Shown here: positions 1 to 63,926 of the stretch, in pieces
Position numbering within the stretch: the stretch's first letter is position 1
How the letters are laid out: each line of letters begins with the position of its first letter
Origin: Macrostomum lignano
Lineage: Eukaryota
Assembly: GCA_002269645.1 (NCBI GenBank)
Contig: NIVC01000404.1
Location: 186,001 to 250,000, forward strand
DNA: 64,000 bases
Direction of reading: 5' to 3'
Notes under the pieces: generated by a model
Seen by the model: only the letters and a program-made list of their open reading frames with translations
What the model was told of the DNA's origin: nothing
The model's database searches: none
Program-made: the position numbers and the translations under genes

Positions 1-32
1 TTTGTGTGGCCATAGAGAATAGGGACAGGGAA

Positions 33-430
<398 letters not shown>

Positions 431-441
431 GAAACCCTTAC

Positions 442-3400
442 CATTAATCACCCTGACTATGCGCCACAGCAGGAACAGGACAATAACGGACACCTCCGAG
501 GACTCGAGTTTGACGAACACGACGTCAGCTACGAAGGACACGGCGATAACGACCGCGTCCACAACCTGCGGTGTCGGGAGTGTACGGAGTGGAGGGGAGG
601 AATTAGAGAGGGAATTTAGGGATCAGTGTGAGGATTTGAAGTCAGGGTTTTGTGTCTAAAAAGATTAGGGATCACAGAAGGAGAGTAGGGATCAGAGAGG
701 GAGATTAGGGGTCAGAGAGGGAGATTAGGGGTCAGAGAGGGAGATTAGAGATCACAGAGGGAGATTAGAGATCGGAGAGGGAGATTAGGGATCAGAGAGG
801 GAGATTAGGGGTCAGAGAGGGAGATTAGGGGTCAGAGAGGGAGATTAGGGGTCAGAGAGGGAGATTATTGATCACAGAGGGAGATTAGAGATCGGAGAGG
901 GAGATTAGAGTTCAGAGAGGGAGATTAGGGGTCAGAGAGGGAGATTAGGGGTCAGAGAGGGAGATTAGAGATCAGAGAGGGAGATTAGATACCAGAGAGG
1001 GAGATTAGGGATCAGAGAGGGAGATTAGGGGTCAGAGAGGGAGATTAGAGTTCAGAGAGGGAGATTAGGGGTCAGAGAGGGAGATTATTGATCACAGAGG
1101 GAGATTAGGGGTCAGAGAGGGAGATTAGAGGGTCAGAGAGAAAGATTCGCGATCAGGAATCAGGAATCAGGATCAGGAAGATTAGGAACCGGAGGTAATC
1201 CTGAACTTCTGAGTAATAAATCCCGAACTCTAGTATTTACCGTACCTCAAACCTGTCGCGCAGAAACCCCCTGCCCAGGCAGACAATCTTCAGGGCCACC
1301 TCGGAGACGAACAGCGCCAAGATGGCGATGCTGACGAAGTGCAGCACGGCGGAGGCCGAGTGCAGCAGACGGGCCTGGCTGAACTCGAAGTGGAAGCTGC
1401 TGAACAGCGACGGCCCGCTGGAGTTGCTCGGCGAGGCTGGCGCCGAAGTCGACGCTGAAGAGGACGAGTTGACGCGAGCGTCTGACAGCGCGGTCACGAT
1501 GGCGTTCATCCCGGAGGCCAGCTTCTCGGCGAACTGAGGCGCCGCCAGCAGCTGCTGGGAGAACTCGGGCAGCAGGAGGCCGCGCTGTGCCAGCGGCTTT
1601 GAGAAGCTGCGATTAACGAAGGCGGCTGTTCGAGCGAACGCGGACTCGAGTTCCTGCTTCTCGCCTGGCGAGGAGGATTAGAGATTAAGGATTAAGGATT
1701 AGGGATAAAGGATTAGGGATTAGGGATTAGGGATTAGGGTATAGGGATTAGAGATTAAGTATTAGGGCATAGGGATTAGGGATTAGGGAATAGGGTATAT
1801 GGATTAAAGACTAGGGTATAGGGATTAGGGATTAGAGATTAGGGTATAGGGGTTAGGGATTAGAAATTAGGGTATAGGGATTAGGGATTAGAAATTAGGG
1901 TATAGGGATTAGGGATTAGAGATTAGGGTAAAGGGATTAGGGATTAAGGATTAGGGTAAAGGGATTAGGGATTAAGGATTAGGGTAAAGGGGTTAGGGAT
2001 TAAGGATTAGGGTAAAGGGATTAGGGATTAGGGATTAGAGTATGGTGATTAGGGATTAGGGATTAAAACGAGGGATTTGCCCATATCGGCGAAGAGAGGA
2101 TTGAGTCTCTCTCCTCTGAGTAAGAAATAGAAGATTCATGACTCAAGCTTTAAACCAATACATCCCAGATCGAATCCATTTTTTTAAATATCGTTAAAAA
2201 CAAACAACAGAAATTAGCATAAAAATTTAAACTCAGCAGACAGTAAATTATAATAGTTAGAATGTTTCGAGAAAAAATCGATAAGAAAGTCCGATAAACT
2301 ATACGAAAGCAGTTGGGTTAATTTCGATAAGAATTCGATTTCGAATCAGTTTCAATGCACGACTCAGAATAAAGTTTCAGCTGCATGGTGGGAAAGGTCA
2401 CCGGGGCTTGGGCTGCCCGCGCAGCACTTGCCCAGTGCTCGAGGCCTTTGAAACTTCACGATAGCAATCTGAACTCTTAAGATTTATGTCTTTTCTCAGA
2501 TCTCTATTCTCCTCTCTCATCTCTCACCTCTCCTCTCTCCTCTCTCCTCTCTCCTCTCTCCTCTCTCCTTTCTCCTCTCTCCTCTCTCCTCTCTCCTCTC
2601 TCATCTATCCTCTCTCATATCTCCTCTCCACTCTCCCCTCTCTCCTCTCTCCTCTCTTCTCTCTCCTCTCTCATCTCTCCTCTCTCTCTTCTCTCCTCTC
2701 TCCTCTCTCCTCTCTCCTCTCTCATCTATCCTCTCTCATCTCTCCTCTCTCCTCTCTCATCTCTCTTCTCTCCTCTCTAATCTCTCCTCTCTCCTCTCTC
2801 CTCTCTCCTCTCTCCTCTCTCCTCTCTCCTCTCTCCTCTCTCCTCTCTCCTCTTTCCTCTCTCCTCTCTCCTCTCTCCTCTCTCATATCTCCTCTCTCCT
2901 CTCTCATATCTCCTCTCTCATATCTCCTCTCTCATCTCTCCTCTCTCATCTCTCCTCTCTCATCTCTCCTTTCTCATATCTCCTCTCTACTCTCCTCTCT
3001 CGTATCTCCTCTCTCCTCTCTCCTCTCTCCTCTCCTCTCTCCTATTTCCTCTCTCCTCTCTCCTCTCTCCTCTCTCATCTCTCCTCTCTCCTCTCTCATC
3101 TCTCTTCTCTCCTCTCTCCTCTCTTCTCTCTCCTCTCTCCTCTCTCCTCTCTCCTCTCTCCTCTCTCCTCTCTCCTCTCTCCTCTCTCATCTCTCCTCTC
3201 TCTCCTCTCTCCTCTCTCCTCTTTCCTCTCTCCTCTCTCATCTATCCTCTCTCATCTCTCCTCTCTCCTCTCTCATCTCTCTTCTCTCCTCTCTCATCTC
3301 TCCTCTCTCATCTCTCCTCTCTCTCTCTCTCTCCTCTCTCCTCTCTCCTCTCTCCTCTCTCCTCTCTCCTCTCTCCTCTCTCCTCTCTCATCTATCCTCT

Positions 3401-6400
3401 CTCATCTCTCCTCTCTCCTCTCTCATCTCTCTTCTCTCCTCTCTAATCTCTCCTCTCTCCTCTCTCCTCTCTCCTCTCTCCTCTCTCCTCTCTCCTCTCT
3501 CCTTTTTCCTCTGTCCTCTCTCCTCTCTCCTCTCTCATATCTCCTCTCTCCTCTCTCATATCTCCTCTCTCATATCTCCTCTCTCATATCTCCTCTCTCA
3601 TCTCTCCTCTCTCATCTCTCCTTTCTCATATCTCCTCTCTACTCTCCTCTCTCGTATCTCCTCTCTCCTCTCTCCTCTCTCCTCTCCTCTCTCCTATCTC
3701 CTCTCTCCTCTCTCCTCTCTCCTCTCTCATCTCTCCTCTCTCCTCTCTCATATCTCCTCTCTCCTCTCTCCTCTCTCCTCTCTCCTCTCTCCTCTCTCCT
3801 CTCTCCTCTCTCCTCTCTCCTCTCCTCTCTCCTCTTCTCTCTCCTCTCCACTCTCCTCTCTCGTCTTCTCTTTCCCCTCCTCTACTCTATCCTTTGTACT
3901 CTCTCCTCTCTCTCCTCTCTCCTCTATCATATCTCCTCTCTCCTCTCTCCTCTCTCCACTCTCCTCTCTCCTCTCTCCCCTTTCGTCTCTCCTCTCTCTT
4001 CTCTTCTCTCTCGTCTCTCCTCTCTTTTCTCTTATCTCTCTACTGTCCTCTCTCCTCTCTCCTCTCTCCTCTATCATATCTCCTCTCCTCTCTCCTCTCT
4101 CCTCTCTCCACTCTCCTCTCTCCTCTCTCCCCTTTCGTCTCTCCTCTCTCTTCTCTTCTCTCTCGTCTCTCCTCTCTTTTCTCTTATCTCTCTACTGTCC
4201 TCTCTCCTCTCTCCTCTCTTCTCTCTCCTCTCTCATATCTCCTCTCTCATATCTCCTCTCTCATATCTCCTCTCTCATATCTCCTCTCTCTCATATCTCC
4301 TCTCTCATATCTCCTCTCTCATATCTCCTCTCTCATATCTCCTCTCTCATATCTCCTCTCTCATATCTCCTCTCTCATATCTTCTCTCTACTCTCCTCTT
4401 CTTTCATATCTCCTCTCTTCTCTCCTCTCTCCTCTCCTCTCTCCTCTCCTCTCTCTCTCTCTCTCTCTCTCCACTCTCCTCTCTCCTCTCCTCTCTCCTC
4501 TCTCATATCTCCTTTCTACTCTCCTCTCTCATATCTCCTCTCTCCTCTCTCCTCTCTCCTCTCTCATCTCTCCACTGTCCTCTCTCCTCTCTCCTCTCTC
4601 CTTTCTCTCTCTCCTCTCTCATCTCTCCTCTCTCATCTCTCCTCTCTCCTCTCTCATATCTCCTCTCTCCTCTCTCATATCTCCTCTCTCCTCTCCTCTC
4701 TCCTCTCTCCTCTCTCCTCTCTTCTCTCTTCTCTCTCCTCTCTCATCTCTCCACTGTCCTCTCTCCTTTCTCCTCTCTCCTTTCTTCTCTCTCCTCTCTC
4801 CTCTCTCCTCTCTCCTCTCCTCTCTCCTCTCCTCTCTCCTCTCCTCTCTCCCTCTCCACTCTTCTCTCTCGTCTTCTCTTTCCCCTCCTCTACTCTATCC
4901 TTTGTACTCTCTTTTCTCTCCTCTTCTCTCTCATCTACCCCGCCATTTCGTACAAGATTCTGTTATCTCACATTGCATTTATTAAAGTTCGCCGTGCACC
5001 ACGTTAAGAATTATCACCAAAATAGCACCACCGCAAGCTGGTACAGAGAGCTACAAACACTCCTGCTAGGCTTTAAAATGAGTCCAAGATAAGATATCAA
5101 ACTACCGTACTTTTAGTAGACTTGTTTGCAAATGATTCAGTCTTTACTTGCCTAAATTTAAATCATTTTATTGTTTTACTTTATAACAAAAATACCTGCA
5201 AAATAAGGCAACGGTTTGAGAAAGATTATAGAGACATTTAGTGGGAGACGATTCTTGATGAGGGATTAGCCACTGTTGATAAGGGATTAGCGATTGTTGA
5301 TAAGGGATTAGCCACTGTTGATAAGGGATTAGCGATTGTTGATAAGGGATTAGCGATTGTTGATGACGGATTAGCTATTGTTGATGAGGGATTAGCGATT
5401 GTTGATGAGGGATTAGCTATTGTTGATGAGGGATTAGCTATTGTTGATGAGGGCTTAGCGATTGTTAATGATGGATTAGCGATTGTTGATGAGGGATTAG
5501 CGATTGTTGATGAGGGCTTAGCGATTGTTGATGACGGATTAGCGATTGTTGATGAGGGATTAGCGATTGTTAATGAGGGATTAGCGATTGTTGATGAGGG
5601 ATTAGCGATTGTTGATGAGGGATTAGCGATTGTTAATGAGGGATTAGCGATTGTTGATGAGGGATTAGCTATTGTTGATGAGGGATTAGCTATTGTTGAT
5701 GAGGGCTTAGCGATTGTTAATGATGGATTAGCGATTTTTGATGAGGGATTAGCGACTGCTGATGAAGGATTAGTGATTGTTGATGAGGGATTAGCGATTG
5801 TTGATGAGGGATTAGCGATTGTTGATGAGGGATTAGCGATTGTTAATGAGGGATTAGCGATTGTTGATGAGGGATTAGCTATTGTTGATGAGGGATTAGC
5901 TATTGTTGATGAGGGCTTAGCGATTGTTAATGATGGATTAGCGATTTTTGATGAGGGATTAGCGACTGCTGATGAAGGATTAGTGATTGTTGATGAGGGA
6001 TTAGCGACTGCTGATGAAGGATTAGCGATTGTTGATGAAGGATTAGCGATTGTTGATGAGGGATTAGCGATTGTTGATGAGGGATTAGTGATTGTTGTTG
6101 ATAGATTAGCAATGGCTTTTTGGGAATTAGCCAAGTATTGATTTGAATAAATTCATTGGACTAAGAATTTAACATTAAAATATCTGTGGAACAATAACAA
6201 GGCATTATTCAGTGAACTTCCTTATAGAACAAAATTAGAGCATTGGAACAAAAGACAAAAAAGTCAGCGAACTCACTATTCAAAGCCTTAATCTCCAAAA
6301 TGATCTCAGCAATCACCAACACGGCATCGATGAGCACCAGTGCGCAGAGGACAATCTGGGCCGCGTTGGACCTGATGCACTGCAGCAGCTTCTGCTTCCA

Positions 6401-8134
6401 GCTGTAGGACAAGGGAGCACGTATACTTTTGGGGAGTTATTATTATAATTCAATCCATAGACCAACCGGTAAGCTCCAATTATTAAAAAAAAATCCTGAA
6501 AGGTATAGACCACTATTGGAATCCCATTAGATCTTTATTAGAATGTCATTAGACCATCATCAGAATCCCATTAGAATCTCATTAAATCATTATTCGAATA
6601 TCATTAGACCATCATTAGAATCTCATTAGACCATCATTAGAATCTCATTAGACCATCATTAGAATCTCATTAGACCATCATTAGAATTCCATCAGATCAT
6701 TATTTAAATCCCATTAGATGTATATAATAGTCTCAATAGACCATTCCTAGAATCCCATTGAATCATCATTAAGTCCCATTAGATGAACATTCGAGTCTTA
6801 TTAGATAATCAATAAATCATTCCTAGAATCGAATCTATTTAGATTTTTGTTAGAATTCAAATAGATCCAAATTATAATCCCATTAGATCTTTATTTGAAT
6901 CCCATTAGATCATCATTAAAATGTGGTCAGATAACCACCAGCTCACTCACGTGGATCTTTTGGCCCGATTTTCGGCGGAGCCGAGCTCCGTCTGCAGCAG
7001 ACTCAAATCGATGTTGTCCTTCTGCAGCTGCTTGATGAAGTTCTTGTTGTGCAGCCACCGGTACTGGTAGCCGCAACTGAGAGGATAAAGGGGTTTTAAA
7101 ATTTGTAAATAAAAAAATTTAAAAATTATAGCAAATTAAACTTTGACAACAGAAGAGTTTTGTTACGAAAGTACAGATCTATTACTGTTAGATCTGAGAA
7201 CTGTTCCTGTTAGATTCAACATCTGTTCCTGTTAGATTCAACATCTGTTCCTGTTAGATTCAACATCTGTTCCTGTTAGATTCAACATCTGTTCCTGTTA
7301 GATTCAACATCTGTTCCTGTTAGATTCAACATCTGTTCCTGTTAGATTCAACATCTGTTCCTGTTAGATTCAACATCTGTTCCTGTTAGATTCAACATCT
7401 GTTCCTGTTAGATTCAACATCTGTTCCTGTTAGATTCAACATCTGTTCCTGTTAGATTCAACATCTGTTCCTGTTAGATTCAACATCTGTTCCTGTTAGA
7501 TTCAACATCTGTTCCTGTTAGATTCAACATCTGTTCCTGTTAGATTCAACATCTGTTCCTGTTAGATTCAACATCTGTTCCTGTTAGATTCAACATCTGT
7601 TCCTGTTAGATTCAACATCTGTTCCTGTTAGATTCAACATCTGTTCCTGTTAGATTCAACATCTGTTCCTGTTAGATTCAACATCTGTTCCTGTTAGATT
7701 CAACATCTGTTCCTGTTAGATTCAACATCTGTTCCTGTTAGATTCAACATCTGTTCCTGTTAGATTCAACATCTGTTCCTGTTAGATTCAACATCTGTTC
7801 CTCTTAGAAAAGATCCAACATCTGTTCTTGTTAGAAAAGATCCAACATCTGTTCTTGTTAGATAAGCTCTCCAACATCTGTTCCTGTTAGATAAGCTCTC
7901 CAACATCTGTTCCTGTTAGATAAGCTCTCCAAAATCTGTTCCTGTTAGATAAGCTCTCCAACATCTGTTCCTGTTAGATAAGCTCTCCAACATCTGTTCC
8001 TGTTAGATAAGCCAAAGATGAAGCTGAAAATCAAATATATTCATATTCTGGGCACACTTACCGCCTTCTACTCAAAGCGATGTCGCCTCTCACTTGCGAA
8101 TATATGAGCATAGTAGGTTGCAATGGTCTTATAA
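442..8134 (-). CDS. HVCN1: Voltage-gated proton channel (Hv family), 3'-partial. Exons 8062-8134 (alternative ATG at 8111), 6951-7076, 6277-6401, 1246-1664, 442-565; continues beyond position 1
   Basis: All exons have GT/AG boundaries and consistent phases. Translation: S1 [25 protein letters not shown] (Asp at the human D112 selectivity position, Glu at E119); S2 [23 protein letters not shown] (H140, F150, E153, K157 equivalents); S3 [18 protein letters not shown] (D174, D185); S4 [13 protein letters not shown] (W207, R208, R211, N214). Alignment to human Hv1 is from memory. Confidence 0.92.
662..1145. repeat. 20-bp minisatellite GAGATTAGGGGTCAGAGAGG
   Basis: Direct reading; fills an Hv intron. 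Confidence 0.95.
1675..2066. repeat. Degenerate (GATTAGG)n telomere-like 7-mer array
   Basis: TTAGGGA units mixed with TTAGGGTATAGGGA variants. Confidence 0.9.
2495..4935. repeat. (TCTCC)/(TC)-type polypyrimidine satellite
   Basis: Direct reading; source of the 868-aa SLLSP pseudo-ORF. Confidence 0.97.
5255..6108. repeat. 21-bp minisatellite GTTGATGAGGGATTAGCGATT
   Basis: Direct reading. Confidence 0.96.
6520..6920. repeat. Degenerate CATTAG-core repeat
   Basis: Recurrent ATCATTAGAATC(T/C)CATTAGACC. Confidence 0.8.
7185..8010. repeat. 22-bp minisatellite ACATCTGTTCCTGTTAGATTCA
   Basis: Highly homogeneous core with longer variant units at the right end. Confidence 0.97.
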
Positions 8135-10239: not shown

Positions 10240-15677
<5,438 letters not shown>

Positions 15678-18824: not shown

Positions 18825-21800
18825 TCAGTCTTCGGAATCATCTAATTTAGTTGCGTCAGCAGTTGTCTCAGTTAGAGGTAGGTCTGAAATAAAAATATGG
18901 TTGAAAGTTGGATTTTAAAATGTTATAAATAATGCTTCTCTATTTTTAGACGACAAAAGTACAAATCGAACTCGAAAAACATTGGTCTGTACTATACTAT
19001 GTAAATTATTTGTGGGTGACGACTGGCTATGCGGCGAGTGTACATTGGTTTGGGGTGGTGGGTGAGGACTGGCTATGCGGCGAGTATACATTGGCTTGGG
19101 GTGGTGGGTGAGGACTGGCTATGCGGCGAGTGTACATTGGCTTGGGGTGGTGGGTGAGGACTGGCTATGCGGCGAGTGTACATTGGCTTGGGGTGGTGGG
19201 TGAGGACTGGCTATGCGGCGAGTGTACATTGGCTTGGGGTGGTGGGTGAGGACTGGCTATGCGGCGAGTGTACATTGGCTTGGGGTGGTGGGTGAGGACT
19301 GGCTATGCGGGGAGTAAACACTGATTTGGGCATCACAAATTATTCTTTAATAATAATCAATAACGTACAAAAGTTGAAAAAATGCTTCTAGTGATACAAA
19401 ACATTATTAAGCAGCAGATAGTTAGCTGAAAAGTTTACTATATCTATAGGCACTGCACCGAACTAATGATAGCTAAATTTCTACTACAAATTTAGAATTG
19501 ATTTTAGATTTAATTCGTGCAAAATGACTCATTGTACTGTGATCAAAAAGTAGAAAATTAGAAAAGATAAGCGGGATTAATTAATTAATCAGATTAGATA
19601 AGCATTTTAGCAGCAAGCCAGTATAGACAAAGTAAGTATGTGAAAGTGCAAATCGTTTGTGATTAATTGATTACATTGTAGACAAAGCCTTTAATGGACA
19701 ATTAAAAATCGTTTAAAGCACTCCAACTGCTTTAACTAATCTTACACCTTGATACCCAAAGTCAAATACAAAAGAAACCGTAAAAAATTATTCTTGTGTT
19801 TTCATTCAACTACCTTATTATGTGGTGGATGCCCGACCAATAAGAATCAAGGATGGGCGGGTGGGTTTGCTGACTAATAGGAATAAAGAATAGGGCGGGT
19901 GTGTGTCTCGACCAGTAGGAATGAACGAGTGGGGCGGGTGGGTGTCCCGACCAATAAGAATAAAGGATAGGGCGGGTCGGTGTCTCGACCAATAGGAATG
20001 AAATATGGGGCAGGGTGGGTTTTCTGACTAATAACAATGAAGGATGAGCGGGGTGGGTGTCATGACCAATAAGAATGAAGGATGGGGCGGGGTAAGTGTC
20101 CCGACCAATGGGAATGAAGGATGAGCGGGGTGGGTGTCATGACCAATAAGAATGAAGGATGGGGCGGGGTAAGTGTCCCGACCAATGGGAATGAAGGATA
20201 AGCGGGGTGGGTGTCCTGACTAATAGGAATGAAGGATGGGCGGGGTGGGTGTCCTGACCAATAGGAATGAAGGATGGGCGGGGTGGGTGGCCTTATCGAT
20301 AAGCATGAAGGATGGGGCGGGTCGGTGTCTCGACCAATAGGAATTAAGGATGGGCGGGGTGGGTGGGTGTCCTGACTAATAAGAATGTAGGATAGGGCGG
20401 GTGGGTGTCCCGACCAATAAGAATGAAGGATGTGGCGGGGGGGGTGTCCCGACCAATGGGTGAAGGAAAGGTCAGTCCTCTGATTTAAATTAAAATTACA
20501 AGTTTACTAAGAGTCTTTCGTCAATATAAAATAACATCGTTTGTCAACAACTTTTACCGTGTGTATTCCAGATGCTCCAGCTCCAATTCCAACCACTGTT
20601 GATTATAGTATTAAAGAAAAATATGCAAATGCACACATTTAGCACCGCAAATGCGATAATGACAACAAAAAATGAATAAACTGTTGGCGTGGCCTAAATG
20701 ATAACACCCTAAACTAGATTAAAAACTAATATCCAATTGAATTTGAAAATATTTTTGTGCAATATTTCGTGCAGATAGGAGGGTATATGAAGTTATTAAG
20801 TATGCATTTAACAGCTTACTACCTTATTAGTAGCACTACTACATATATAAGATTAACTTTAGTAATTTGAGTAGCTACTAAATATATAATAAAATTTCTA
20901 TACCATGTTATAATTACATGTAAAGGTAGTTAGTAAGTTTATAAATGCGCGAAATTCATACCACTACTACTTTTACTACTACTAATGCTGGAATTTAAGT
21001 AGAATATTATGCATGCGGCATACTAAGCATTAACTTATATAGCTGACCTAAATATATTAATCAAAAAGAAATTGTTATTAATCAGACAAGATAACATTTA
21101 GGCAACACAGACGAATGAAAACAAGAAAAACAATTTAAAAAACTGGGGGAATCTACAGAGTTTTTAAAATGAATGTTGGATTTATAATTTGTTAATAGAT
21201 AATAAAAATTACGCCAGACGAAGAAAGCAGAGGAGAGACGTGAGACATAAGAGAGTGAGACAGGAGAAGGAAGAAAGGAGAGAAGAGAGACTGGAGTAGG
21301 GAGACAGGAGAGAAGGGAGACAGGAGAAGTGAGACAGGAGAGAAGTGAGACAGGAGAAGGGAGACAGGAGAAGTGAGACAGGAGAACGGAGACAGGAGAA
21401 GGGAGACAGGAGAAGTGAGACAGGAGAACGGAGACAGGAGAAGGGAGACAGGAGAAGGGAGACAGAAGAGAAGGGAGACAGGAGAAGGGAGACAGGACAG
21501 AAGGGAGACAGGAGAGAGGGAGACAAGAGAAGGGAGACAGGAGAAGTGAGACAGGAGAGAAGGGAGACAGGAGAAGTGAGACAGGACAGAAGGGAGACAG
21601 AAGTGAGACAGGAGAGAAGGGAGACAGGAGAGAAGGGAGACAGGAGAAGGGAGACAGGAGAGAAGGGAGACAAGAGAAGTGAGACAGGAGAGAAGGGAGA
21701 CAGGAGAGAAGGGAGACAGGAGAAGGGAGACAGGAGAGAAGGGAGACAGGAGAGAAGGGAGACAGGAGAGAAGGGAGACAGGAGAGAAGGGAGACAGGAG

Positions 21801-24800
21801 AGAAGGGAGACAGGAGAAGGGAGACAAGAGAGAAGGGAGACAAGAGAAGTGAGACAGGAGAAGGGAGACAGGAGAAGGGAGACAGGAGAGAAGGGAGACA
21901 GGAGAAGGGAGACAGGAGAAGGGAGACAAGAGAAGTGAGACAGGAGAAGGGAGACAGGAGAGAAGGGAGACAGGAGAAGGAAGACAGGACAAGGGAGACA
22001 GGAGAAGGGAGACAGGAGAAGGAAGACAGGAGAAGGGAGACAGAAGATGGGAGACAGGAGAAGGAAGACAGGAGAAGGGAGACAGTAGAAGGGAGACAGG
22101 AAAAGGGAGACAGGAGAAGGGAGACAGGAAAAGGGAGACAGGAGAAGGGAGACAGGAAAAGGGAGACAGGAGAAGGGAGACAGGAGAAGGGAGACAGGAG
22201 AAGGGAGACAGGAAAAGGGAGACAGGAGAAGGGAGACAGGAGAAGTGAGACAAGAGAGAAGGGAGACAGGAGAAGGGAGACAGGAGAAGGGAGACAGGAA
22301 AAGGGAGACAGGAGAAGGGAGACAGGAGAAGGGAGACAGGAAAAGGGAGACAGGAGAAGGGAGACAGGAGAAGGGAGACAGGAGAAGTGAGACAAGAGAG
22401 AAGGGAGACAGGAGAGAAGGGAGACAAGAGAGAAGGGAGACAGGAGAGAAGGGAGACAGGAGAGAAGGGAGACAGGAGAGAAGGGAGACAGGAGAGAAGG
22501 GAGACAGGAGAGAAGGGAGACAGGAGAGAAGGGAGACAGGAGAGAAGGGAGACAGGAGAAGTGAGACAGGAGAAGGGAGACAAGGTGTGCAAGGGTCGCA
22601 CACTAAAATTAAAGCCAGTGTTAAAAACTACATTAAAACGCCAGCTACAAAGTAGCAGAGATTAGGGGCAGCAGAACGTGAAGCACGGCAGCAAATAGCC
22701 CAGTAACTCACCGTTCCCGTGGCTGCCAGACCTGATCAACAGTCTTGGTGTCGCAGAGTCCCACGGGGTCAAGTCGCGATCGTCGATGGCGCCGGCTGGC
22801 TGCGACTGCGGCAGTGCGGCGGCGGCGACTGTCGAGAGGGCGGAACCGCTGCTGTCTGTTGCGATGGGAGAAGGGAGATGAGAAACTATAGAATGGAGAT
22901 AGAGGGATAGAATGAAGGGGACAGGGGGATAGAATGAAGGGGGACAGGGGGATAGAATGAAGGGGGACAGGGGGATAGAATAAAGGGAGACAGGGGGATA
23001 GAATGGAGACAGAAGGATAGAATGAAGGGAGAACTGGAGAAGGGATGAAAGTATGAAAGGAGACATACATGTACGATTCAGACAGAGTCAGACACAGGAG
23101 AACTGGACACAGAGAGAGTCAGACACAGGAGAACTGGACACAGAGAGAGTCAGACACAGGAGAACTGGACACAGAGAGAGTCAGACACAGGAGAACTGGA
23201 CACAGAGTCAGACACAGGAGAACTGGACACAGAGAGAGACACAGGAGAACTGGACACAGAGAGAGTCAGACACAGGAGAACTGGACACAGAGAGAGTCAG
23301 ACACAGAAGAACTGGACACAGAGAGAGTCAGACACAGGAGAACTGGACACAGAGAGAGTCAGACACAGGAGAACTGGACACAGAGAGAGTCAGACACAGG
23401 AGAACTGGACACAGAGAGAGTCAGACACAGGAGAACTGGACACAGAGAGAGTCAGACACAGGAGAACTGGACACAGAGAGAGTCAGACACAGGAGAACTG
23501 GACACAGAGAGAGTCAGACACAGGAGAACTGGACACAGAGAGAGTCAGACACAGGAGAACTGGACACAGAGAGAGTCAGACACAGGAGAACTGGACACAG
23601 AGAGAGTCAGACACAGGAGAACTGGACACAGAGAGAGTCAGACACAGGAGAACTGGACACAGAGAGAGTCAGACACAGGAGAACTGGACACAGAGAGAGT
23701 CAGACACAGGAGAACTGGACACAGAGAGAGTCAGACACAGGAGAACTGGACACAGAGAGAGTCAGACACAGGAGAACTGGACACAGAGAGAGTCAGACAC
23801 AGGAGAACTGGACACAGAGAGAGTCAGACACAGGAGAACTGGACACAGAGTCAGACACAGGAGAACTGGACACAGAGAGAGACACAGGAGAACTGGACAC
23901 AGAGAGAGTCAGACACAGGAGAACTGGACACAGAGAGAGTCAGACACAGAAGAACTGGACACAGAGAGAGTCAGACACAGGAGAACTGGACACAGAGAGA
24001 GTCAGACACAGGAGAACTGGACACAGAGAGAGTCAGACACAGGAGAACTGGACACAGAGAGAGTCAGACACAGGAGAACTGGACACAGAGAGAGTCAGAC
24101 ACAGGAGAACTGGACACAGAGAGAGTCAGACACAGGAGAACTGGACACAGAGAGAGTCAGACACAGGAGAACTGGACACAGAGAGAGTCAGACACAGGAG
24201 AACTGGACACAGAGAGAGTCAGACACAGGAGAACTGGACACAGAGAGAGTCAGACACAGGAGAACTGGACACAGAGAGAGTCAGACACAGGAGAACTGGA
24301 CACAGAGAGAGTCAGACACAGGAGAACTGGACACAGAGAGAGTCAGACACAGGAGAACTGGACACAGAGAGAGTCAGACACAGGAGAACTGGACACAGAG
24401 AGAGTCAGACACAGAAGAACTGGACACAGAGAGAGTCAGACACAGGAGAACTGGACACAGAGAGAGTCAGACACAGGAGAACTGGATACAGAGAGAGACA
24501 CAGGAGAACTGGACACAGAGAGAGTCAGACACAGGAGAACTGGACACAGAGAGAGACAGACACAGGAGAACTGGACACAGAGAGAGTCAGACACAGGAGA
24601 ACTGGACACAGAGAGAGACAGACACAGGAGAACTGGACACAGAGAGAGTCAGACACAGGAGAACGGGACACAGAGAGAGACACAGGAGAGCTGGACACAG
24701 AGAGAGTCAGACACAGGAGAACTGGACACAGAGAGAGTCAGACACAGGAGAACTGGACACAGAGAGACACAGGAGAACTGAACACAGAGAGAGTCAGACA

Positions 24801-29100: not shown

Positions 29101-32100
29101 GCGACTGAAGAATCAAGGCGCCTGATCTACAAGATCACAAAGAGATCCACGCGAGATCTACTCGAAGTATACAGAAGGGATATCTCCAAACGACGTCAAG
29201 GTAAGAAGTACCTTTAATTGATAACTTCATTATGCCACCAACGAAAACTCTCTGATCTACGAGTATGCCGCTAACAAAAACCATATAATCAAGGCCACCA
29301 ATAATAACTCTAATGAATGCCGCCATGAAATTAGCAACCTGTATTATTGCAATTTTATAACTCACCCCGTCAGTAATGATACTCTTCATGGCATGTTCCA
29401 TCTTCTTGAACAGGCGATAATTCTGCAGGATGTCAATGATGCCCATGTATAGGAATAGGCGCTCGCCTTTGGCGTTTCTAGCTGGAATGCCGCCAACCCT
29501 GAAAGCAATAGCGATAAAACTATTGTTACAAAGTGATTATCCCATATGTGACATGAAAATATACCTAACTGAGGATCAAATTAACAGTCAGTGGAAAATC
29601 CCATCACAATGGAAAATACCGTCACAATGGAAAATATCATCACAATGGAAAATCCTATCACAATGGTAAATACCATCACACTAAAATCCAATCAAAACGA
29701 AAAATCCCATCATACGAGCTAATGAGAAATCCCACTATAATGAAAAATCCCACCATAATGAGAAATCCCACCATAATGAGAAATCCCACCATAATGAGAA
29801 ATCCCATCATAATGAGAAATCCCATCATAATGAGAAATCTCATCATAATGAGAAATCTCATCATAATGAGAAATCCCATCAAAACGAAAAATCCCATCAC
29901 AATGAAAATCCCTTCATAATGAACAATGCCTCACGGAGTAATGTCCATCTCGTCAGAGTGCAAATCGATGGGCGCCGTGTTCTCAGCATTGATTGACTCA
30001 ATCGGCGTATTGAACACGGAAATCTTCTTTAGACTCCAGCCTCGTTGAAGGCCTTCAACGCTGCCGCCGCGGCCAGCGCGTCGCTGCTGCTGCTGATTGC
30101 CGTCGGATTCATCGAAGCTGGCGGAGGCGGCCGCTGCAGAGGCGGTCAGTGCCGATGCGGATGTTGCTGCGCCTGCGCCGGAAGTTGACGGCGCGCCGCC
30201 TGCGAAGCCAACTGTTGCAGCGGCGCCAACGGAGCTGGTGGGTCGCTGACGCTCCTGTTGATGATTTGGCGACCCATTTTAAAGTACATCACTATTGGTG
30301 AAAGTGGAAAATCTTAAGGTAGGGAAATCCCATGGTTAGCCCAGGTGTGCCAGCGACCCAGGCTCGATTCCAAGTGCAGTCACAGTTTATTGGGAAATCC
30401 CAGGGTAGCTTATTGGGAAATCCCAGGGTAGCTTATTGGGAAATCCCAGAGTTGTTTATAGGGAAATCTTAGGGTTGATTTTGGGAAATCCAAGGGTTGT
30501 TTATAGGGAAATCTCAGGGTAGTTTATTGGGAAATCCCGGGGTATTTCGTGGGAAATCCCGTGTATTTTATTAGGAAATCCTGGTTATTTTTTGGGAAAT
30601 CTCAGGGTAGTTTATTGGGAAATTCCGGGGTATTTTTGGGAAATAATGGGTATTTTATTGACAAATCCCGGGGTTGTTTAGAGGAAAACCCCGGAGCTAT
30701 TTATAGGGAAATCTCAGGTAGCTTGTTGGGAAAATCCAGGGTAGTTTAGTGGAAAATCCTGGGGTTTTTTCATTAGAAATCCCAAAGTAAATTGATGGGA
30801 ACTCTCATAAAAACTAAAAAGATGGGAGAGGTTTTAAATCATAAGTCATAACTCAAATCAATAGCTCACCCTTTCTCGAAGAGTCTGATCTAAATTATAA
30901 ATGCCCAACAGTAGCGAGTAGTCCATAATTCGAAACGATTCAAGTACCAGACAGTCTCGACTAATGCATTCGATTAGGCTGGTGTAGATGTCTGCCTCAA
31001 GCGACAGGCCCGTCTCGTGTAGTGCTCTGCGGACAATGCGGATGAGACTTAGGGAATGGAGTGCTTAAATGTATGGAGTGCTCTAATGGATGGAGTGCTC
31101 AAATGGATGGAGTACTCAAATGGATAGAGTGCTCAAATGGATGGAGTGTTCTAATGTATGTAGTACTCGAATGTATGGAGTGCTCAAATGTATGGAGTGC
31201 TCAAATGGATGGAGTGCTCAGATGGATGGAGTGCTCAAATGGATGGAGTGCTCAAATGTATGGAGTGCTCAAATGGATGGAGTGCTCAAATGGATGGAGT
31301 GCTCAAATGGATGGAGTGCTCAAATGTATGGAGTGCTCAAATGGATGGAGTGCTCAAATGGATGGAGTGCTCAAATGGATGGAGTGCTCAAATGGATGGA
31401 GTGCTCAAATAGATGGAGTGCTCAAATAGATGGAGTGCTCAAATGGATGGAGTGCTCAAATAGATGGAGTGCTCAAATGGATGGAGTGCTCAAATGGATG
31501 GAGTGCTCAAATGGATGGAGTGCTCAGATGGATGGAGTGCTCAAATAGATGGAGTGCTGAAATGGATGGAGTGCTCAAATGTATGGACTTCTCAAATGGA
31601 TGGAGTGCTCTAATATATGGCTCATGGAGAGCTCAAACAGAAGAACTGTCTTTAGGACACAGTTTCATATTGAATATTATAAATAATAATCTTGCTCACT
31701 TAAAATCCAAATCTTTAAACGTAGGCGAAGATTTCGCTCGCTCGGCATTGCTTGCCTGGCGCTTATAAGTGGAGCCTTTCAGGTCGTACTTCTCCGTTAG
31801 CCGTATAGTAGAGGGCAGCAGGTTGTTCATCACTACGAAGCGAATGTTTTTACTGCCGCACTGTTCGGGATAGTTAGATAGATATTGATTTTAATAGTAT
31901 ATTATGTATGTTCAGTCCGAACAGACTACTCACTGAATAAATTAAACAGTAATATAAGTAGCGTTTCATCTTCTGACAATGTAAGACACAAGGTGAAAAC
32001 GAATCTGTTCAGACACTCTACAAAGATTAATAACGATGCGTACACAAACTGCATTCTGCGTAAGCACCTCCCGCAGGGTCCCAGTGAGCTTAGTACTTTA

Positions 32101-35100: not shown

Positions 35101-38100
35101 ATTTAGCATATGACCCTAACAATCAGACTATGACCGTACCCTATATGACCCTAACAAGCAGACTATGACCATTATCCATATGACCCTAACAAGCAGACTA
35201 TGACCAGTATCCATATGACCCAAACAGACTATGACCATTTTGCATATGGCCCTAACAAGCAGACTATGACCATTACCGATATGACCCAAACAAGCAGACT
35301 ATGACCATTACCTATATGACCCTAAGAAACAGACTATGACCATCACCCATATGACCCTAACAACCAGACTATGACTATTATCCACATGACCACATGACCC
35401 AAACAGACTATGACCATTTCGCATATGACCCAAACAAGCAGACTATGACCATTATCCATATGACCCTAACAAGCAGACTATGACCATTATCCATATGACC
35501 CAAACAGACTATGACCATTATCCATATGACCCTAACAAGCAGACTATGACCATACCCCATATGACTCAAACAGACTATGACCATGAAAAAGTAAACCTAT
35601 CAATTACCGAAGAACACGCACCTGATAGCAGTACAGACCATAGAACTTGGGCAGCAGAGTTCGGGGTTCTGAGTCAGGGTCAAATAGTACTGCAGTAGCA
35701 ATCGCTGCAGGTACTTGGCTTCCTTGTGCTGCACAGTTTTAATAATGAAATTATCATCCGCAGTGCGATAGAAGATGGAGCCGGAGGCGCCTGGATTTGA
35801 TAATTCTTCCAATTCTTCGCCGCAAATGGATGCCAAAAATTGCGATATGTCAATATTGTACAGCTTGCGAAAGTGCCTGAACGCCAGTGGGGCGTACGTT
35901 TTGAATGTGAAGCTGCTCATGGTGTGCGCCATGGTGAGCTTGCCGCCCTCTCTGCGGGTGGGCGAGCAGCAAAAGTACATTTGGTTAGATTGTAGTGAGT
36001 ATAGCACAGACAGACCGACACTAGGACAAACAGACATAGAGACAGACAGACACTAAGAAAGACACAGATCGCCAGACACTAAAAGAAACACATACAGATA
36101 GCCAGACACTAGGACTAAAGCAGACACATACAGATAGCCAGAAACTAACAGAAACACATACAGATAGCCAGACACAAACAGTACAGACAGACACAGATAG
36201 CCAGACACAAACAGACACATACAGATAGCCAGACACAAACAGAGACACATACAAATAGCCAGACACTAACAGTACAGACAGACACAGATAGCCAGACACA
36301 AACAGACACATACAGATAGCCAGACACAAACAGAGACACATACAAATAGCCAGACACTAACAGTACAGACAGAAACAGATAGCCAGACACAAACAGAGAC
36401 ACATACAAATAACCAGACACTAACAGTACAGACAGACACAGATAGCCAGACACAAACAGAGACACATACAAATAACCAGACACTAACAGTACAGACAGAC
36501 ACAGATAGCCAGACACAAACAGAGACACATACAAATAACCAGACACTAACAGTACAGACAGACACAGATAGCCAGACACAAACAGAGACACATACAAATA
36601 ACCAGACACTAACAGTACAGACAGACACAGATAGCCAGACACTAACAGAGACACATACAAATAGCCAGACACTAACAGTACAGACAGACACAGATAGCCA
36701 GACACTAACAGAGACACATGCAGATAGCCAGACACAAACAGAGACACATACAGATAGCCGGACACAAACAGAGACACATACAAATAGCCAGACACTTAAC
36801 AGTACAGACAGACACAGACAGCCAGACACTAACAGTACAGACAGACACAGATAGCCAGACACTAACAGAGACACATACAAATAGCCAGACACTTAACAGT
36901 ACAGACAGACACAGACAGCCAGACACTAACAGTACAGACAGACACAGATAGCCAGACACTAACAGAGACACTGACACATACAAATAACCAGACACTAACA
37001 GTACAGACAGACACAGATAGCCAGACACTAACAGAGACACATGCAGATAGCCAGACACAAACAGAGACACATACAGATAGCCGGACACAAACAGAGACAC
37101 ATACAAATAGCCAGACACTTAACAGTACAGACAGACACAGACAGCCAGACACTAACAGTACAGACAGACACAGACAGCCAGACACTAACAGTACAGACAG
37201 ACACAGATAGCCAGACACTAACAGAGACACATACAAATAGCCAGACACTAACAGTACAGACAGACACAGATAGCCAGACACTAACAGTACAGACAGACAC
37301 AGATAGCCAGACACTAACAGAGACACATACAAATAGCCAGACACTAACAGTACAGACAGACACAGATAGCCAGACACTAACAGTACAGACAGACACAGAT
37401 AGCCAGACACTAACAGAGACACATGCAGATAGCCAGACACTAACAGACAGACACAGATAGCCAGACACTAACAGACACATACAGATAGCCAGACACAAAC
37501 AGTACAGACAGACACAGATAGCCAGACACAAACAGAGACACATACAAATAGCCAGACACTAACAGTACAGACAGACACAGATAGCCAGACACTAACAGTA
37601 CAGACAGACACAGATAGCCAGACACAAACAGTACAGACAGACACAGATAGCCAGACACAAACAGAGACACATACAAATAGCCAGACACTAACAGTACAGA
37701 CAGACACAGATAGGCACACTAAGACTAAGGCAGACACAGAGATACAAGCACAACAAACAAATCACGCACAGCAGAGGCCGCTCACCTGGGAAAATCCACA
37801 ATCTCACAAACGCCAAAGTCCTGAGTCAGCAGGTCCCTACTGGGCTTTTGCGCCTCGTTGCCGACAGAATTCTGTATGCCCAGCTGGATCGCTCGCATGA
37901 TCTCGTTGGTTGGTCTCTGCCAGTGTTAATTGTGGCCGGCTTTGATGTCCAATCCAATTTAGTCTTGAAATAGCTGAATCAGATAACTCCGATTTATTCT
38001 TAAATCCTAAGTTTTAAACTTTTAGTTTCGTTTGAAATAACACAACCTAAATCTTTGTTGTTTTCAAGATTCCAAATCCCAGTGTCTTCACAATTCACAA

Positions 38101-63700: not shown

Positions 63701-63926
63701 CGCCGAGGCCTACTGTCCGGAGCCGGTGCAGGAGGTGCTGCTACTTACGTTGCAGGCACCCTACCGGCGGGACAGGCGAAGTCTCGGCGCTACGTCGACT
63801 GTCTGCTGGCTGACGCCGGCGCCCGGACTCTGCCGGCGGTGCGGCTTTTGTTCGCGCCCAAGCTTTGAAGCGCGCCATCTGACGCTGCTTTTGTGAACTG
63901 GCAGCGTACTCTGTTGTTGCTGTTGT
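60488..63926 (+). mobile_element. Near full-length RTE-like non-LTR retrotransposon (APE endonuclease + RT, no ORF1), frameshifted
   Basis: EN motifs: GTLNCRTL, DVIALQE, GGVG, ILGDLNA, SANTRF, LDHVL, SDHRLL. RT motifs: QNGFRPHRGT, FVDFRKAFDSV, GVLQGDTLAPFLF, GYADDLALL, FVYLGG. ORF stop at 63880-63882 and a (TGT)n tail. An 11-bp direct repeat TATAGATTACA lies at 60477-60487 and 63927-63937. About ten single-base frameshifts and one TAG at 63504. Confidence 0.93.

What the first reader, a model, noticed from the sequence alone, without database searches (positions are those of the whole stretch)
442..565. Hv proton channel with only two S4 arginines (LLWRIVR)
Seen: the S3-S4 exon translates [41 protein letters not shown]. 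Established: canonical Hv1 has RxWRxxR (R205/R208/R211). Here the R205-equivalent codon (470-472) is CTG (Leu), while the S1 selectivity Asp, W207, R208, R211 and N214 equivalents are kept. From memory, two-Arg S4 variants are described only in a few insect and mollusc Hv paralogues, with altered or leaky gating. Inference: this is a divergent Hv paralogue with a weakened or shifted voltage sensor.
Basis: partly seen in the sequence, partly recalled or inferred. Interest (0 to 1): 0.7.

Follow-up and report, generated by a model that had tools for sequence, protein, structure and literature searches.

The report
Flatworm proton-channel gene lacking first arginine
This exon belongs to a proton-channel gene of the flatworm Macrostomum lignano whose voltage sensor carries two charged arginines instead of three; that feature is inherited and shared by a whole subfamily in flatworms, worms, bryozoans and brachiopods, so it is real but is a new member of a known kind.

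Summary
On the minus strand, 565-442 is a cleanly spliced exon. It translates exactly as quoted, and codon 470-472 is CTG (Leu) where Hv1 has its first S4 arginine (R205, R1).

Three further exons (7076-6951, 6401-6277, 1664-1246) join in frame. Together they give the N-terminal motif, S1 with the selectivity Asp, a ~100-residue S1-S2 loop, S2, S3 and S4. The 3' end lies off the window.

The window is Macrostomum lignano. The Leu is not an error. All M. lignano paralogues with an intact S4 record (one has a garbled S4), all cestode and trematode relatives recovered, and nemertean, annelid, bryozoan and brachiopod relatives carry LxWRxxR. Trematodes and a nemertean also keep a separate canonical RLWRxxR channel.

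The gene belongs to the proline-less "unconventional" Hv group of Lophotrochozoa, noted in a 2023 review but never recorded electrically. Its characterised relative, Aplysia AcHv3 (LPWRxxR), is proton-selective, leaky and weakly voltage dependent. Human R205W behaves similarly.

Weak voltage sensing here is therefore a reasonable inference but is untested. I rate it a new member of a known kind, of moderate-to-low interest.

The parts
442..565 (-). Exon encoding S3, the short S3-S4 linker and S4 (VVDAVV...[12 protein letters not shown]+G). It ends in phase 1.
   Evidence: Translation and splice sites. Aligns to human Hv1 residues through ...LWRVARIING.
470..472 (-). CTG = Leu at the position of Hv1 R205 (R1), the first S4 gating charge.
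   Evidence: The same Leu is in M. lignano paralogues P0002, P0004 and P0154 and in all flatworm relatives.
1246..1664 (-). Exon encoding a ~100-residue S1-S2 loop (three N-x-S/T sequons, 24% Ser+Thr) and S2. S2 carries the H140, F150, E153, K157 and E171 equivalents.
   Evidence: AG/GT sites and in-frame joining. The loop start aligns with paralogue P0001 at 48% identity. Hydropathy and sequons.
6277..6401 (-). Exon encoding S1 ([41 protein letters not shown]). The selectivity-filter Asp is GAT 6326-6328; the E119 equivalent is at 6305-6307.
   Evidence: Aligns to human Hv1 S1. 100% identical to UniProt A0A1I8ITQ1 once spliced.
6951..7076 (-). Cytoplasmic N-terminal exon with the subfamily motif [19 protein letters not shown].
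   Evidence: 100% match to P0003. The motif is found in 16/29 LxW-type proteins, 0/33 xPW-type and 1/81 R1-bearing proteins.
22712..22853 (-). Further 5' exon ([16 protein letters not shown]...LLIRSGSH). It is incomplete at its 5' side, and its frame differs by one base from the UniProt model about 9 nt before the GT donor at 22711-22710.
   Evidence: tblastn of P0003 and frame analysis.

Best explanation
The exon is part of a multi-exon Macrostomum lignano gene. The gene spans more than 22.8 kb on the minus strand, has introns full of tandem repeats, and runs off the window at its 3' end. It encodes a voltage-sensor-only (S1-S4) protein of the Hv proton-channel family.

It belongs to the lophotrochozoan 'unconventional' lineage that lost the first S4 arginine. 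More precisely, it belongs to the proline-less LxWRxxR subfamily, which has a long glycosylatable S1-S2 loop and a conserved acidic N-terminal motif. The Leu at R1 is an old, conserved character of that subfamily. It is neither an error nor a recent mutation.

Shown here: the gene structure, the family assignment, the retention of every other residue needed for proton conduction and charge transfer, and the conservation of Leu.

Inferred: the protein conducts protons through the S1 Asp / S4 R2 pair as Hv1 does. With one gating charge fewer per subunit, and without the R1-D112/D185 salt bridges that hold the closed state, its conductance-voltage relation should be shallower. It may also leak protons at rest, as AcHv3 and human R205W do.
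For: - Exact translation, canonical splice sites and in-frame joining of four exons into 264 aa.
- Best solved-structure matches are human and mouse Hv1, E 1.7e-15 and 4.6e-14.
- The D112, E119, H140, F150, E153, K157, E171, D174, D185, W207, R208, R211 and N214 equivalents are all present.
- The window exons match M. lignano UniProt A0A1I8ITQ1 at 100%.
- The nearest relatives, P0004-P0017, are all flatworm or nemertean proteins with L at R1.
- The flatworm clade has 95% NJ bootstrap support.
- The same species hold a separate RLWRxxR channel: S. mekongi P0243 versus P0008, Heterobilharzia P0241 versus P0014, Fasciola P0264 versus P0157, Tubulanus P0199 versus P0017.
- Subfamily signatures: S1-S2 gap of 103 aa here, against a median of 8 in R1-bearing proteins and 140 in LxW-type proteins. 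The post-S4 QKRAR motif is in 25/31 LxW-type, 0/85 R1-bearing and 1/29 xPW-type proteins. The N-terminal motif is in 16/29, 1/81 and 0/33 respectively.
- Function of relatives: AcHv3 lacks R1, is proton selective, leaky and changes about 60 mV per e-fold. Human R205W leaks and has weaker voltage dependence.
Against: - No transcript, read or electrophysiological data for this locus were available.
- The 3' exons (post-S4 helix and coiled coil) are outside the window.
- The 5' exon at 22.7 kb has a one-base frame discrepancy with the UniProt model.
- AcHv3 also has a Pro next to the Trp, and its authors say a simple R-to-L change may not explain the leak. Arg-to-Ala mutants of Hv1 were not reported to leak.
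- A common origin with mollusc Hv3 is not robust. One NJ tree gives a single R1-less clade, but bootstrap support is about 19-20%.
- TM-core HMM scores do not favour the xPW group over canonical Hv1.
Confidence: 0.8

Rival explanations
1. The Leu codon is a sequencing or assembly error, or a private mutation of this copy; the real channel has CGG (Arg).
For: CTG is one substitution from CGG. The same window shows at least one single-base discrepancy with a database model elsewhere in the gene.
Against: The identical [13 protein letters not shown] is found in independent M. lignano paralogues P0002, P0004 and P0154. L at this position is found in every cestode, trematode, nemertean, bryozoan, annelid and brachiopod relative recovered.
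Confidence: 0.02
2. This locus is a decaying duplicate (pseudogene) in the duplicated M. lignano genome. It has not yet lost its transmembrane exons.
For: M. lignano has at least three such loci. The 5' exon is out of frame by one base relative to A0A1I8ITQ1. The database model for this locus stops after S1. The 3' end is unseen.
Against: Four consecutive exons have canonical AG/GT sites, compatible phases and no stop codon. Every functionally important residue is kept. The ancestral N-terminal motif is retained here although paralogue P0154 lacks it. A one-base difference could be an assembly error on either side.
Confidence: 0.1
3. The protein is a non-conducting voltage sensor or sensor-like regulator, in the manner of TMEM266/HVRP1, rather than a proton channel.
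For: NCBI names some isoforms of the Lingula relative 'transmembrane protein 266'. TMEM266 is the closest relative of Hv1 and gives no proton current. No member of the proline-less subfamily has been recorded.
Against: TMEM266 has three S4 arginines, Val at the selectivity-Asp position, Met at the D185 position and Asp at the N214 position. The window protein has Asp, Asp and Asn there, and keeps the Hv-specific Trp. AcHv3, with the same R1 loss and a long loop, does conduct protons selectively.
Confidence: 0.1
4. The channel is a normal, steeply voltage-gated proton channel. Loss of R1 is compensated and has little functional consequence.
For: Single Arg-to-Ala mutants of human and mouse Hv1 still gate and were not reported to leak. 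The Pro of AcHv3, absent here, may be the main cause of its odd gating. The charge-transfer centre is intact in M. lignano.
Against: All five tested human S4 mutants, including those at R1 and R2, showed reduced effective charge displacement, and R205W leaks with AcHv3-like currents. R1 normally bonds D112 and D185 in the closed state.
Confidence: 0.25

Closest known systems
Proline-less 'unconventional' Hv channels of Lophotrochozoa (for example Eisenia fetida GIUK01058977, Lingula anatina LOC106155662, Dendrobeania GJXY01243660; review PMC10377628 and its supplement)
   Same: LxWRxxR S4 without R1 and without Pro. Long S1-S2 loop. N-terminal D(N/S)xDxxx(L/I)xxE(L/I) motif. Post-S4 KQRxEFRIxLQKRARR (seen in the M. 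lignano paralogues). S1 Asp and N214 equivalent kept.
   Different: The review names Annelida, Bryozoa and Nemertea for this form. For flatworms it shows only the canonical R-L-W channels of Schistosoma. The M. lignano full-length paralogue is short (397 aa, 68 aa after S4), whereas many relatives have 300-560 aa C-termini. None has been recorded electrically, as far as I could find.
Aplysia californica AcHv3 (XP_005094274, 980 aa; P0106), the mollusc Hv3 type
   Same: R1 replaced by Leu (L429). W, R2, R3 and the S1 Asp kept. Large S1-S2 loop. 43% identity over S2-S4.
   Different: AcHv3 has Pro directly before the Trp (LPWRxxR), a 299-aa loop and a 535-aa C-terminus. It lacks the N-terminal motif and the QKRAR motif. 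Common ancestry of the R1 loss is not robustly resolved.
Canonical Hv1 (human HVCN1; structures 5oqk, 3wkv)
   Same: Four-helix voltage-sensor-only architecture. D112, E119, F150, E153, K157, D174, D185, W207, R208, R211 and N214 equivalents present. H140 equivalent present.
   Different: R205 is Leu. D123 is Glu. No His at the H193 position. S1-S2 gap about 100 aa instead of a median of about 8.
Human Hv1 somatic mutant R205W
   Same: Hydrophobic residue at R1 in an otherwise canonical sensor. Gives closed-state proton leak, faster activation and weaker voltage dependence.
   Different: Trp is not Leu, and it is an engineered or somatic change on a human background rather than a co-evolved protein.
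TMEM266 / HVRP1
   Same: Hv1-like S1-S4 domain followed by a coiled coil. Automated annotation confuses the Lingula relative with it.
   Different: TMEM266 has three Arg, V111, M185, K213 and D217, and gives no proton current. The window protein has Asp/Asp/Asn at the corresponding sites.

Membership tests
Hv (HVCN1-type) voltage-gated proton channels | Four transmembrane helices S1-S4 with no S5-S6 pore domain | tested here: met
   Four hydrophobic segments at the expected places. Pfam Ion_trans matches only profile positions 32-106. The full-length paralogue P0154 ends 68 aa after S4. The window gene's own 3' end is off the window.
Hv (HVCN1-type) voltage-gated proton channels | Acidic selectivity-filter residue in S1 (D112) | tested here: met
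   GAT at 6326-6328 aligns with D112 of human Hv1.
Hv (HVCN1-type) voltage-gated proton channels | S4 signature RxWRxxR with three arginines | tested here: not met
   The sequence is LLWRIVR. W, R2 and R3 are present; R1 is Leu.
Hv (HVCN1-type) voltage-gated proton channels | Asn three residues after R3 (N214), and the charge-transfer centre F150/E153/D174 | tested here: met
   AAT 443-445, TTC 1309-1311, GAG 1300-1302, GAC 557-559.
Hv (HVCN1-type) voltage-gated proton channels | C-terminal coiled coil continuing from S4 | not testable with these tools
   The exons after 442 lie beyond the window start. Paralogue P0154 has ...INGLMMHEKQRDEFRIQLQKRARR...; it is modelled as one long helix, but the model has low overall confidence.
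Hv (HVCN1-type) voltage-gated proton channels | Voltage- and delta-pH-dependent proton-selective current | not testable with these tools
   Needs heterologous expression and patch clamp.
Mollusc Hv3 (AcHv3 type) | R1 replaced by a hydrophobic residue | tested here: met
   Leu at 470-472. AcHv3 has L429.
Mollusc Hv3 (AcHv3 type) | Proline immediately before the S4 Trp (xPWRxxR) | tested here: not met
   Leu (CTG 467-469) precedes the Trp. All flatworm relatives also lack Pro.
Mollusc Hv3 (AcHv3 type) | Very large S1-S2 loop | tested here: met
   Gap of 103 aa, within the xPW range of 89-576 (median 125). The median is 8 in R1-bearing channels.
Mollusc Hv3 (AcHv3 type) | Clade membership with mollusc xPW proteins | tested here: inconclusive
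   The BLOSUM62 NJ tree gives one R1-less clade. Kimura-distance NJ bootstrap support is about 19-20%. HMM scores do not favour xPW.
Proline-less LxWRxxR subfamily of Lophotrochozoa | LxWRxxR S4 plus a long S1-S2 loop | tested here: met
Proline-less LxWRxxR subfamily of Lophotrochozoa | N-terminal motif D(N/S)xDxxx(L/I/V)xxE(L/I) before S1 | tested here: met
   [13 protein letters not shown] in exon 6951-7076. The motif is in 16/29 LxW-type, 0/33 xPW-type and 1/81 R1-bearing proteins.
Proline-less LxWRxxR subfamily of Lophotrochozoa | Post-S4 motif ...EFRIxLQKRARR | not testable with these tools
   The region is off the window. The motif is present in M. lignano paralogues and in 25/31 LxW-type proteins, against 0/85 R1-bearing and 1/29 xPW-type proteins.
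Proline-less LxWRxxR subfamily of Lophotrochozoa | Groups with flatworm members in a tree | tested here: met
   The flatworm clade has 95% bootstrap support. The window protein groups with the M. lignano paralogues and cestode P0010/P0011 at 79%.
TMEM266 / HVRP1 | Non-polar residues at the D112 and D185 positions, three S4 Arg with K213, and Asp at the N214 position | tested here: not met
   The window protein has Asp, Asp, two Arg and Asn.

The most novel reading that the evidence does not exclude
The proline-less LxWRxxR proteins, including this gene, may not be depolarisation-gated plasma-membrane channels at all. They could be weakly voltage-dependent, partly constitutive proton conductances of internal membranes. 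On this reading the conserved acidic N-terminal motif (DLSLL here, resembling a DxxLL sorting signal) directs trafficking, and the long glycosylated S1-S2 loop faces the lumen. Because they lack the Pro of AcHv3, they would also be a natural experiment separating the effect of losing R1 from the effect of the Pro.
Probability: 0.2. Interest if true: 0.55.

Novelty: new member of a known kind. Interest (0 to 1): 0.3.

Why it matters
Hv channels normally carry three S4 arginines. Only one natural channel without R1 (AcHv3) has been recorded, and it also carries an S4 proline that confounds the interpretation. The flatworm proteins lose R1 alone in an otherwise intact sensor. Recording one would show how much of AcHv3's leak and weak voltage dependence comes from the missing charge.

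M. lignano was proposed as a laboratory model for ion-channel work in the 2012 paper I read (PMC3447372); my recollection, not checked here, is that RNAi and transgenesis are available in it. Related parasites (Schistosoma, Fasciola, Echinococcus) carry orthologues. Apart from that, the gene is an ordinary member of a lineage already noted in the literature and already annotated automatically as 'voltage-gated hydrogen channel 1'.

Tried and rejected
- Reading the + strand: stops only.
- Looking up contigs or transcripts for the M. lignano proteins P0003 and P0002: not on record. The codon could therefore not be checked in independent reads.
- Word-indexed homologue search with the single protein: only three M. 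lignano hits. With the subfamily profile: only 16 hits. The index-free search was the informative one.
The paralogue P0154 with a 9-row alignment gave mean pLDDT 45.8 and pTM 0.25. That is too poor to use, so no fold search was run.
- Pfam on the N-terminus: UniRef's 'CaATP_NAI' label for P0003 was not reproduced, and no significant domain was found.
- Testing a single origin of R1 loss: the NJ trees disagree and bootstrap support is weak. HMM scoring of the transmembrane core with the R1 columns removed did not favour Hv3. The question is left open.
- Search for a canonical RLW channel in M. lignano: none appeared. The search depends on a word index, so absence is not shown.
- Rfam and tRNA scans of the window: nothing.
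Full report
**1. Observation**

The + strand of 442-565 contains only stops. The reverse complement of 565-442 translates exactly to [41 protein letters not shown] plus the first base of a Gly codon. The exon is bounded by an AG acceptor (567-566) and a GTAAGG donor (441-440).

Codon 470-472 on the minus strand is CTG (Leu). It aligns with R205 of human Hv1. TGG 464-466, CGC 461-463, AGG 452-454 and AAT 443-445 align with W207, R208, R211 and N214.

**2. The gene**

Six-frame inspection found the upstream exons on the same strand. All have canonical AG/GT sites.

- 6401-6277 encodes S1 (...[26 protein letters not shown]). The selectivity Asp is at 6326-6328.
- 1664-1246 encodes a loop of about 100 residues and S2.
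- 7076-6951 encodes a cytoplasmic N-terminal segment.

Their phases are compatible. The four exons join into an uninterrupted 264-residue product. That product has four hydrophobic segments at the expected positions, and all three N-x-S/T sequons lie in the S1-S2 loop.

The D112, E119, H140, F150, E153, K157, E171, D174 and D185 equivalents are all present. D123 is Glu.

A further 5' exon lies at about 22853-22712, so the gene spans more than 22.8 kb. The introns are filled with tandem repeats. The window begins inside the intron that follows the S4 exon, so the post-S4 helix and coiled coil are not in the window.

**3. Source organism**

The only close database hits are UniRef proteins of the flatworm Macrostomum lignano. 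P0003 (A0A1I8ITQ1, a fragment) maps onto window exons 22853-22712, 7076-6951 and 6401-6277. Once the splice junction is taken into account, it is 100% identical over the latter two. The window is therefore M. lignano DNA, and P0003 is a partial model of this locus.

There is one discrepancy. About 9 nt before the donor of the 22.7-kb exon, the window is one base short relative to what P0003 requires (SGSH|GNG in the window against SGSH|RER in P0003). I cannot tell whether this is an assembly error on either side or a real frameshift.

**4. Is the Leu real?**

Two other M. lignano loci (P0002; P0004/P0154) are 67% (full assembled query) to 83% (S3-S4 exon) identical to this one and carry the same [13 protein letters not shown].

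An index-free HMMER search found 533 relatives. I took a census of the S4 motif in the best 150 and looked up names for 30 of them.

- The nearest relatives, P0004-P0017, are cestode, trematode and M. lignano proteins plus one nemertean. The genera are Rodentolepis, Hymenolepis, Spirometra, Sparganum, Hydatigera, Schistosoma, Heterobilharzia, Fasciola, Clonorchis, Calicophoron and Tubulanus. Every one has a hydrophobic residue at R1: LLLWRIxR, FLIWRIIR, FLVWRMVR or LILWRIVR.
- Bryozoan (Bugula), annelid (Owenia) and brachiopod (Lingula) relatives are also LxW.
- A further tier is the mollusc and brachiopod xPW type. It includes P0106, which is AcHv3 itself (980 aa, L429-P430).
- Canonical LRLWRxxR proteins are interleaved from rank 15 (sea cucumber P0018, E 9e-16) and rank as high as the xPW type.

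**5. A separate paralogue lineage**

A profile of canonical channels recovered RLWRxxR proteins from the same species that hold the LxW type:

- Schistosoma mekongi: P0243 against P0008.
- Heterobilharzia: P0241 against P0014.
- Fasciola hepatica: P0264 against P0157.
- Tubulanus: P0199 against P0017.

The R1-less form is thus an old paralogue, not the flatworm version of Hv1. No canonical M. lignano protein surfaced, but that search depends on a word index, so absence is not shown.

**6. Which subfamily?**

Three features outside the S4 motif separate the proline-less LxW proteins from both canonical and mollusc xPW channels.

- Distance between S1 and S2: median 8 aa in 79 R1-bearing proteins, 140 in LxW-type and 125 in xPW-type proteins. 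The window protein has 103.
- A post-S4 ...QKRAR... motif: 25/31 LxW-type, 0/85 R1-bearing and 1/29 xPW-type proteins. It is off-window here but present in the paralogues.
- An N-terminal motif D(N/S)xDxxx(L/I/V)xxE(L/I): 16/29 LxW-type, 0/33 xPW-type and 1/81 R1-bearing proteins. In the window it is [13 protein letters not shown], in exon 7076-6951.

In NJ trees of 118 transmembrane columns, the flatworm proteins form a clade with 95% bootstrap support. The window protein groups with the M. lignano paralogues and a second cestode group at 79%.

Whether LxW and xPW share a single loss of R1 is unresolved.

- A BLOSUM62 NJ tree gives one R1-less clade.
- Kimura-distance NJ bootstrap support for that clade is only about 19-20%.
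- HMM scoring with the R1 columns removed does not favour xPW over canonical channels.

**7. Comparison with what is known**

Chaves et al. 2022 described AcHv3. It lacks R1, has LPWRxxR, a 299-aa S1-S2 loop and a 535-aa C-terminus. It is proton selective, has a large proton leak, and its conductance changes about 60 mV per e-fold against 4-6 mV for AcHv1/2. The authors suspect an intracellular location, and they note that R-to-L alone may not explain the leak.

The 2023 review calls this the unconventional group. It states that Annelida, Bryozoa and Nemertea have long-loop forms lacking the S4 proline. Its supplement prints such sequences from Eisenia, Lingula (LOC106155662) and Dendrobeania; these show the same N-terminal and post-S4 motifs as the window family. 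For flatworms the review shows only two Schistosoma haematobium channels with R at the R1 position (one a complete RLWRxxR), with a long S3-S4 loop.

The flatworm LxW members are thus in the databases, auto-annotated as 'voltage-gated hydrogen channel 1'. They are not described in what I could read.

Human R205W leaks in the closed state, activates faster and has weaker voltage dependence, with currents 'comparable to AcHv3'.

TMEM266 does not fit. It has three Arg, V111, M185 and D217, and gives no proton current.

A 2012 M. lignano transcriptome listed three HVCN1-like transcripts.

**8. Mechanism**

Shown: the architecture, the residues and the lineage.

Inferred: protons pass through the S1-S4 bundle via the Asp/R2 pair. 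With two gating charges instead of three, and without the R1-D112/D185 closed-state bridges, voltage dependence should be shallower and a resting proton leak is possible. The absence of Pro may make the effect milder than in AcHv3.

**9. Verdict**

However, the trait is characteristic of a widespread and already noted lineage, so this is a new member of a known kind. Its main value is as a clean natural test of losing R1.

The attempted structure model was too poor to use.

Noticed in passing
window 22712-22730 (minus strand): One-base frame discrepancy between the window and UniProt A0A1I8ITQ1, just before the donor of the 5' exon. The window reads ...SGSHGNG; the model reads ...SGSHRER and then joins to CGYQ. 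In the window sequence the exon cannot be joined in frame in the reading that matches the model.
   Followed up: partly
window 6951-7076 (minus strand): The conserved cytoplasmic motif [19 protein letters not shown] is specific to the proline-less R1-less subfamily (16/29 against 0/33 and 1/81). Its core, DLSLL, resembles a DxxLL-type sorting signal. That resemblance is from memory and was not tested.
   Followed up: partly
window 32-430, 662-1156, 1675-2065, 2508-4936, 5249-6110, 7201-8012, 12285-12904, 13389-15313, 21257-22582: The introns of the gene are largely built of tandem arrays: (AGAC)n, 20-22-mers, a 2.4-kb (TCTCCTC)n array and a GGATTAG 7-mer array containing TTAGGG-like units. The same (AGAC)n array type recurs at 12.3 kb.
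   Followed up: partly
window 60885-63900 (+ strand): A G+C-rich (56-64%) stretch with long ORFs of a retroelement. 62704-63483 matches the reverse transcriptase family PF00078 (E 4.8e-19). The upstream ORF 60885-61457 looked endonuclease-like by eye but had no Pfam match.
   Followed up: partly
window 29138-29536 and 35603-36052 (minus strand): Two exon-like ORFs match the phosphatidylinositol-4-phosphate 5-kinase family PF01504: the N-terminal part (E 1.1e-16) and the C-terminal part (E 6e-10). A PIP-kinase gene therefore lies next to the channel gene.
   Followed up: partly
alignment A1; relatives P0008, P0009, P0005 (the trematode P0013 shows the same): Trematode and cestode members of the subfamily have replaced the S2 charge-transfer Glu (E153 equivalent) by Cys or Thr, whereas M. 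lignano keeps Glu. The parasite channels may be further degenerate as voltage sensors.
   Followed up: no
database protein P0001 (UniRef A0A1I8F401, M. lignano): This record reads LFLLCAHCRVING where its near-identical sister records P0004 and P0154 read [13 protein letters not shown]. It is probably an error in that model, not a third S4 variant.
   Followed up: no
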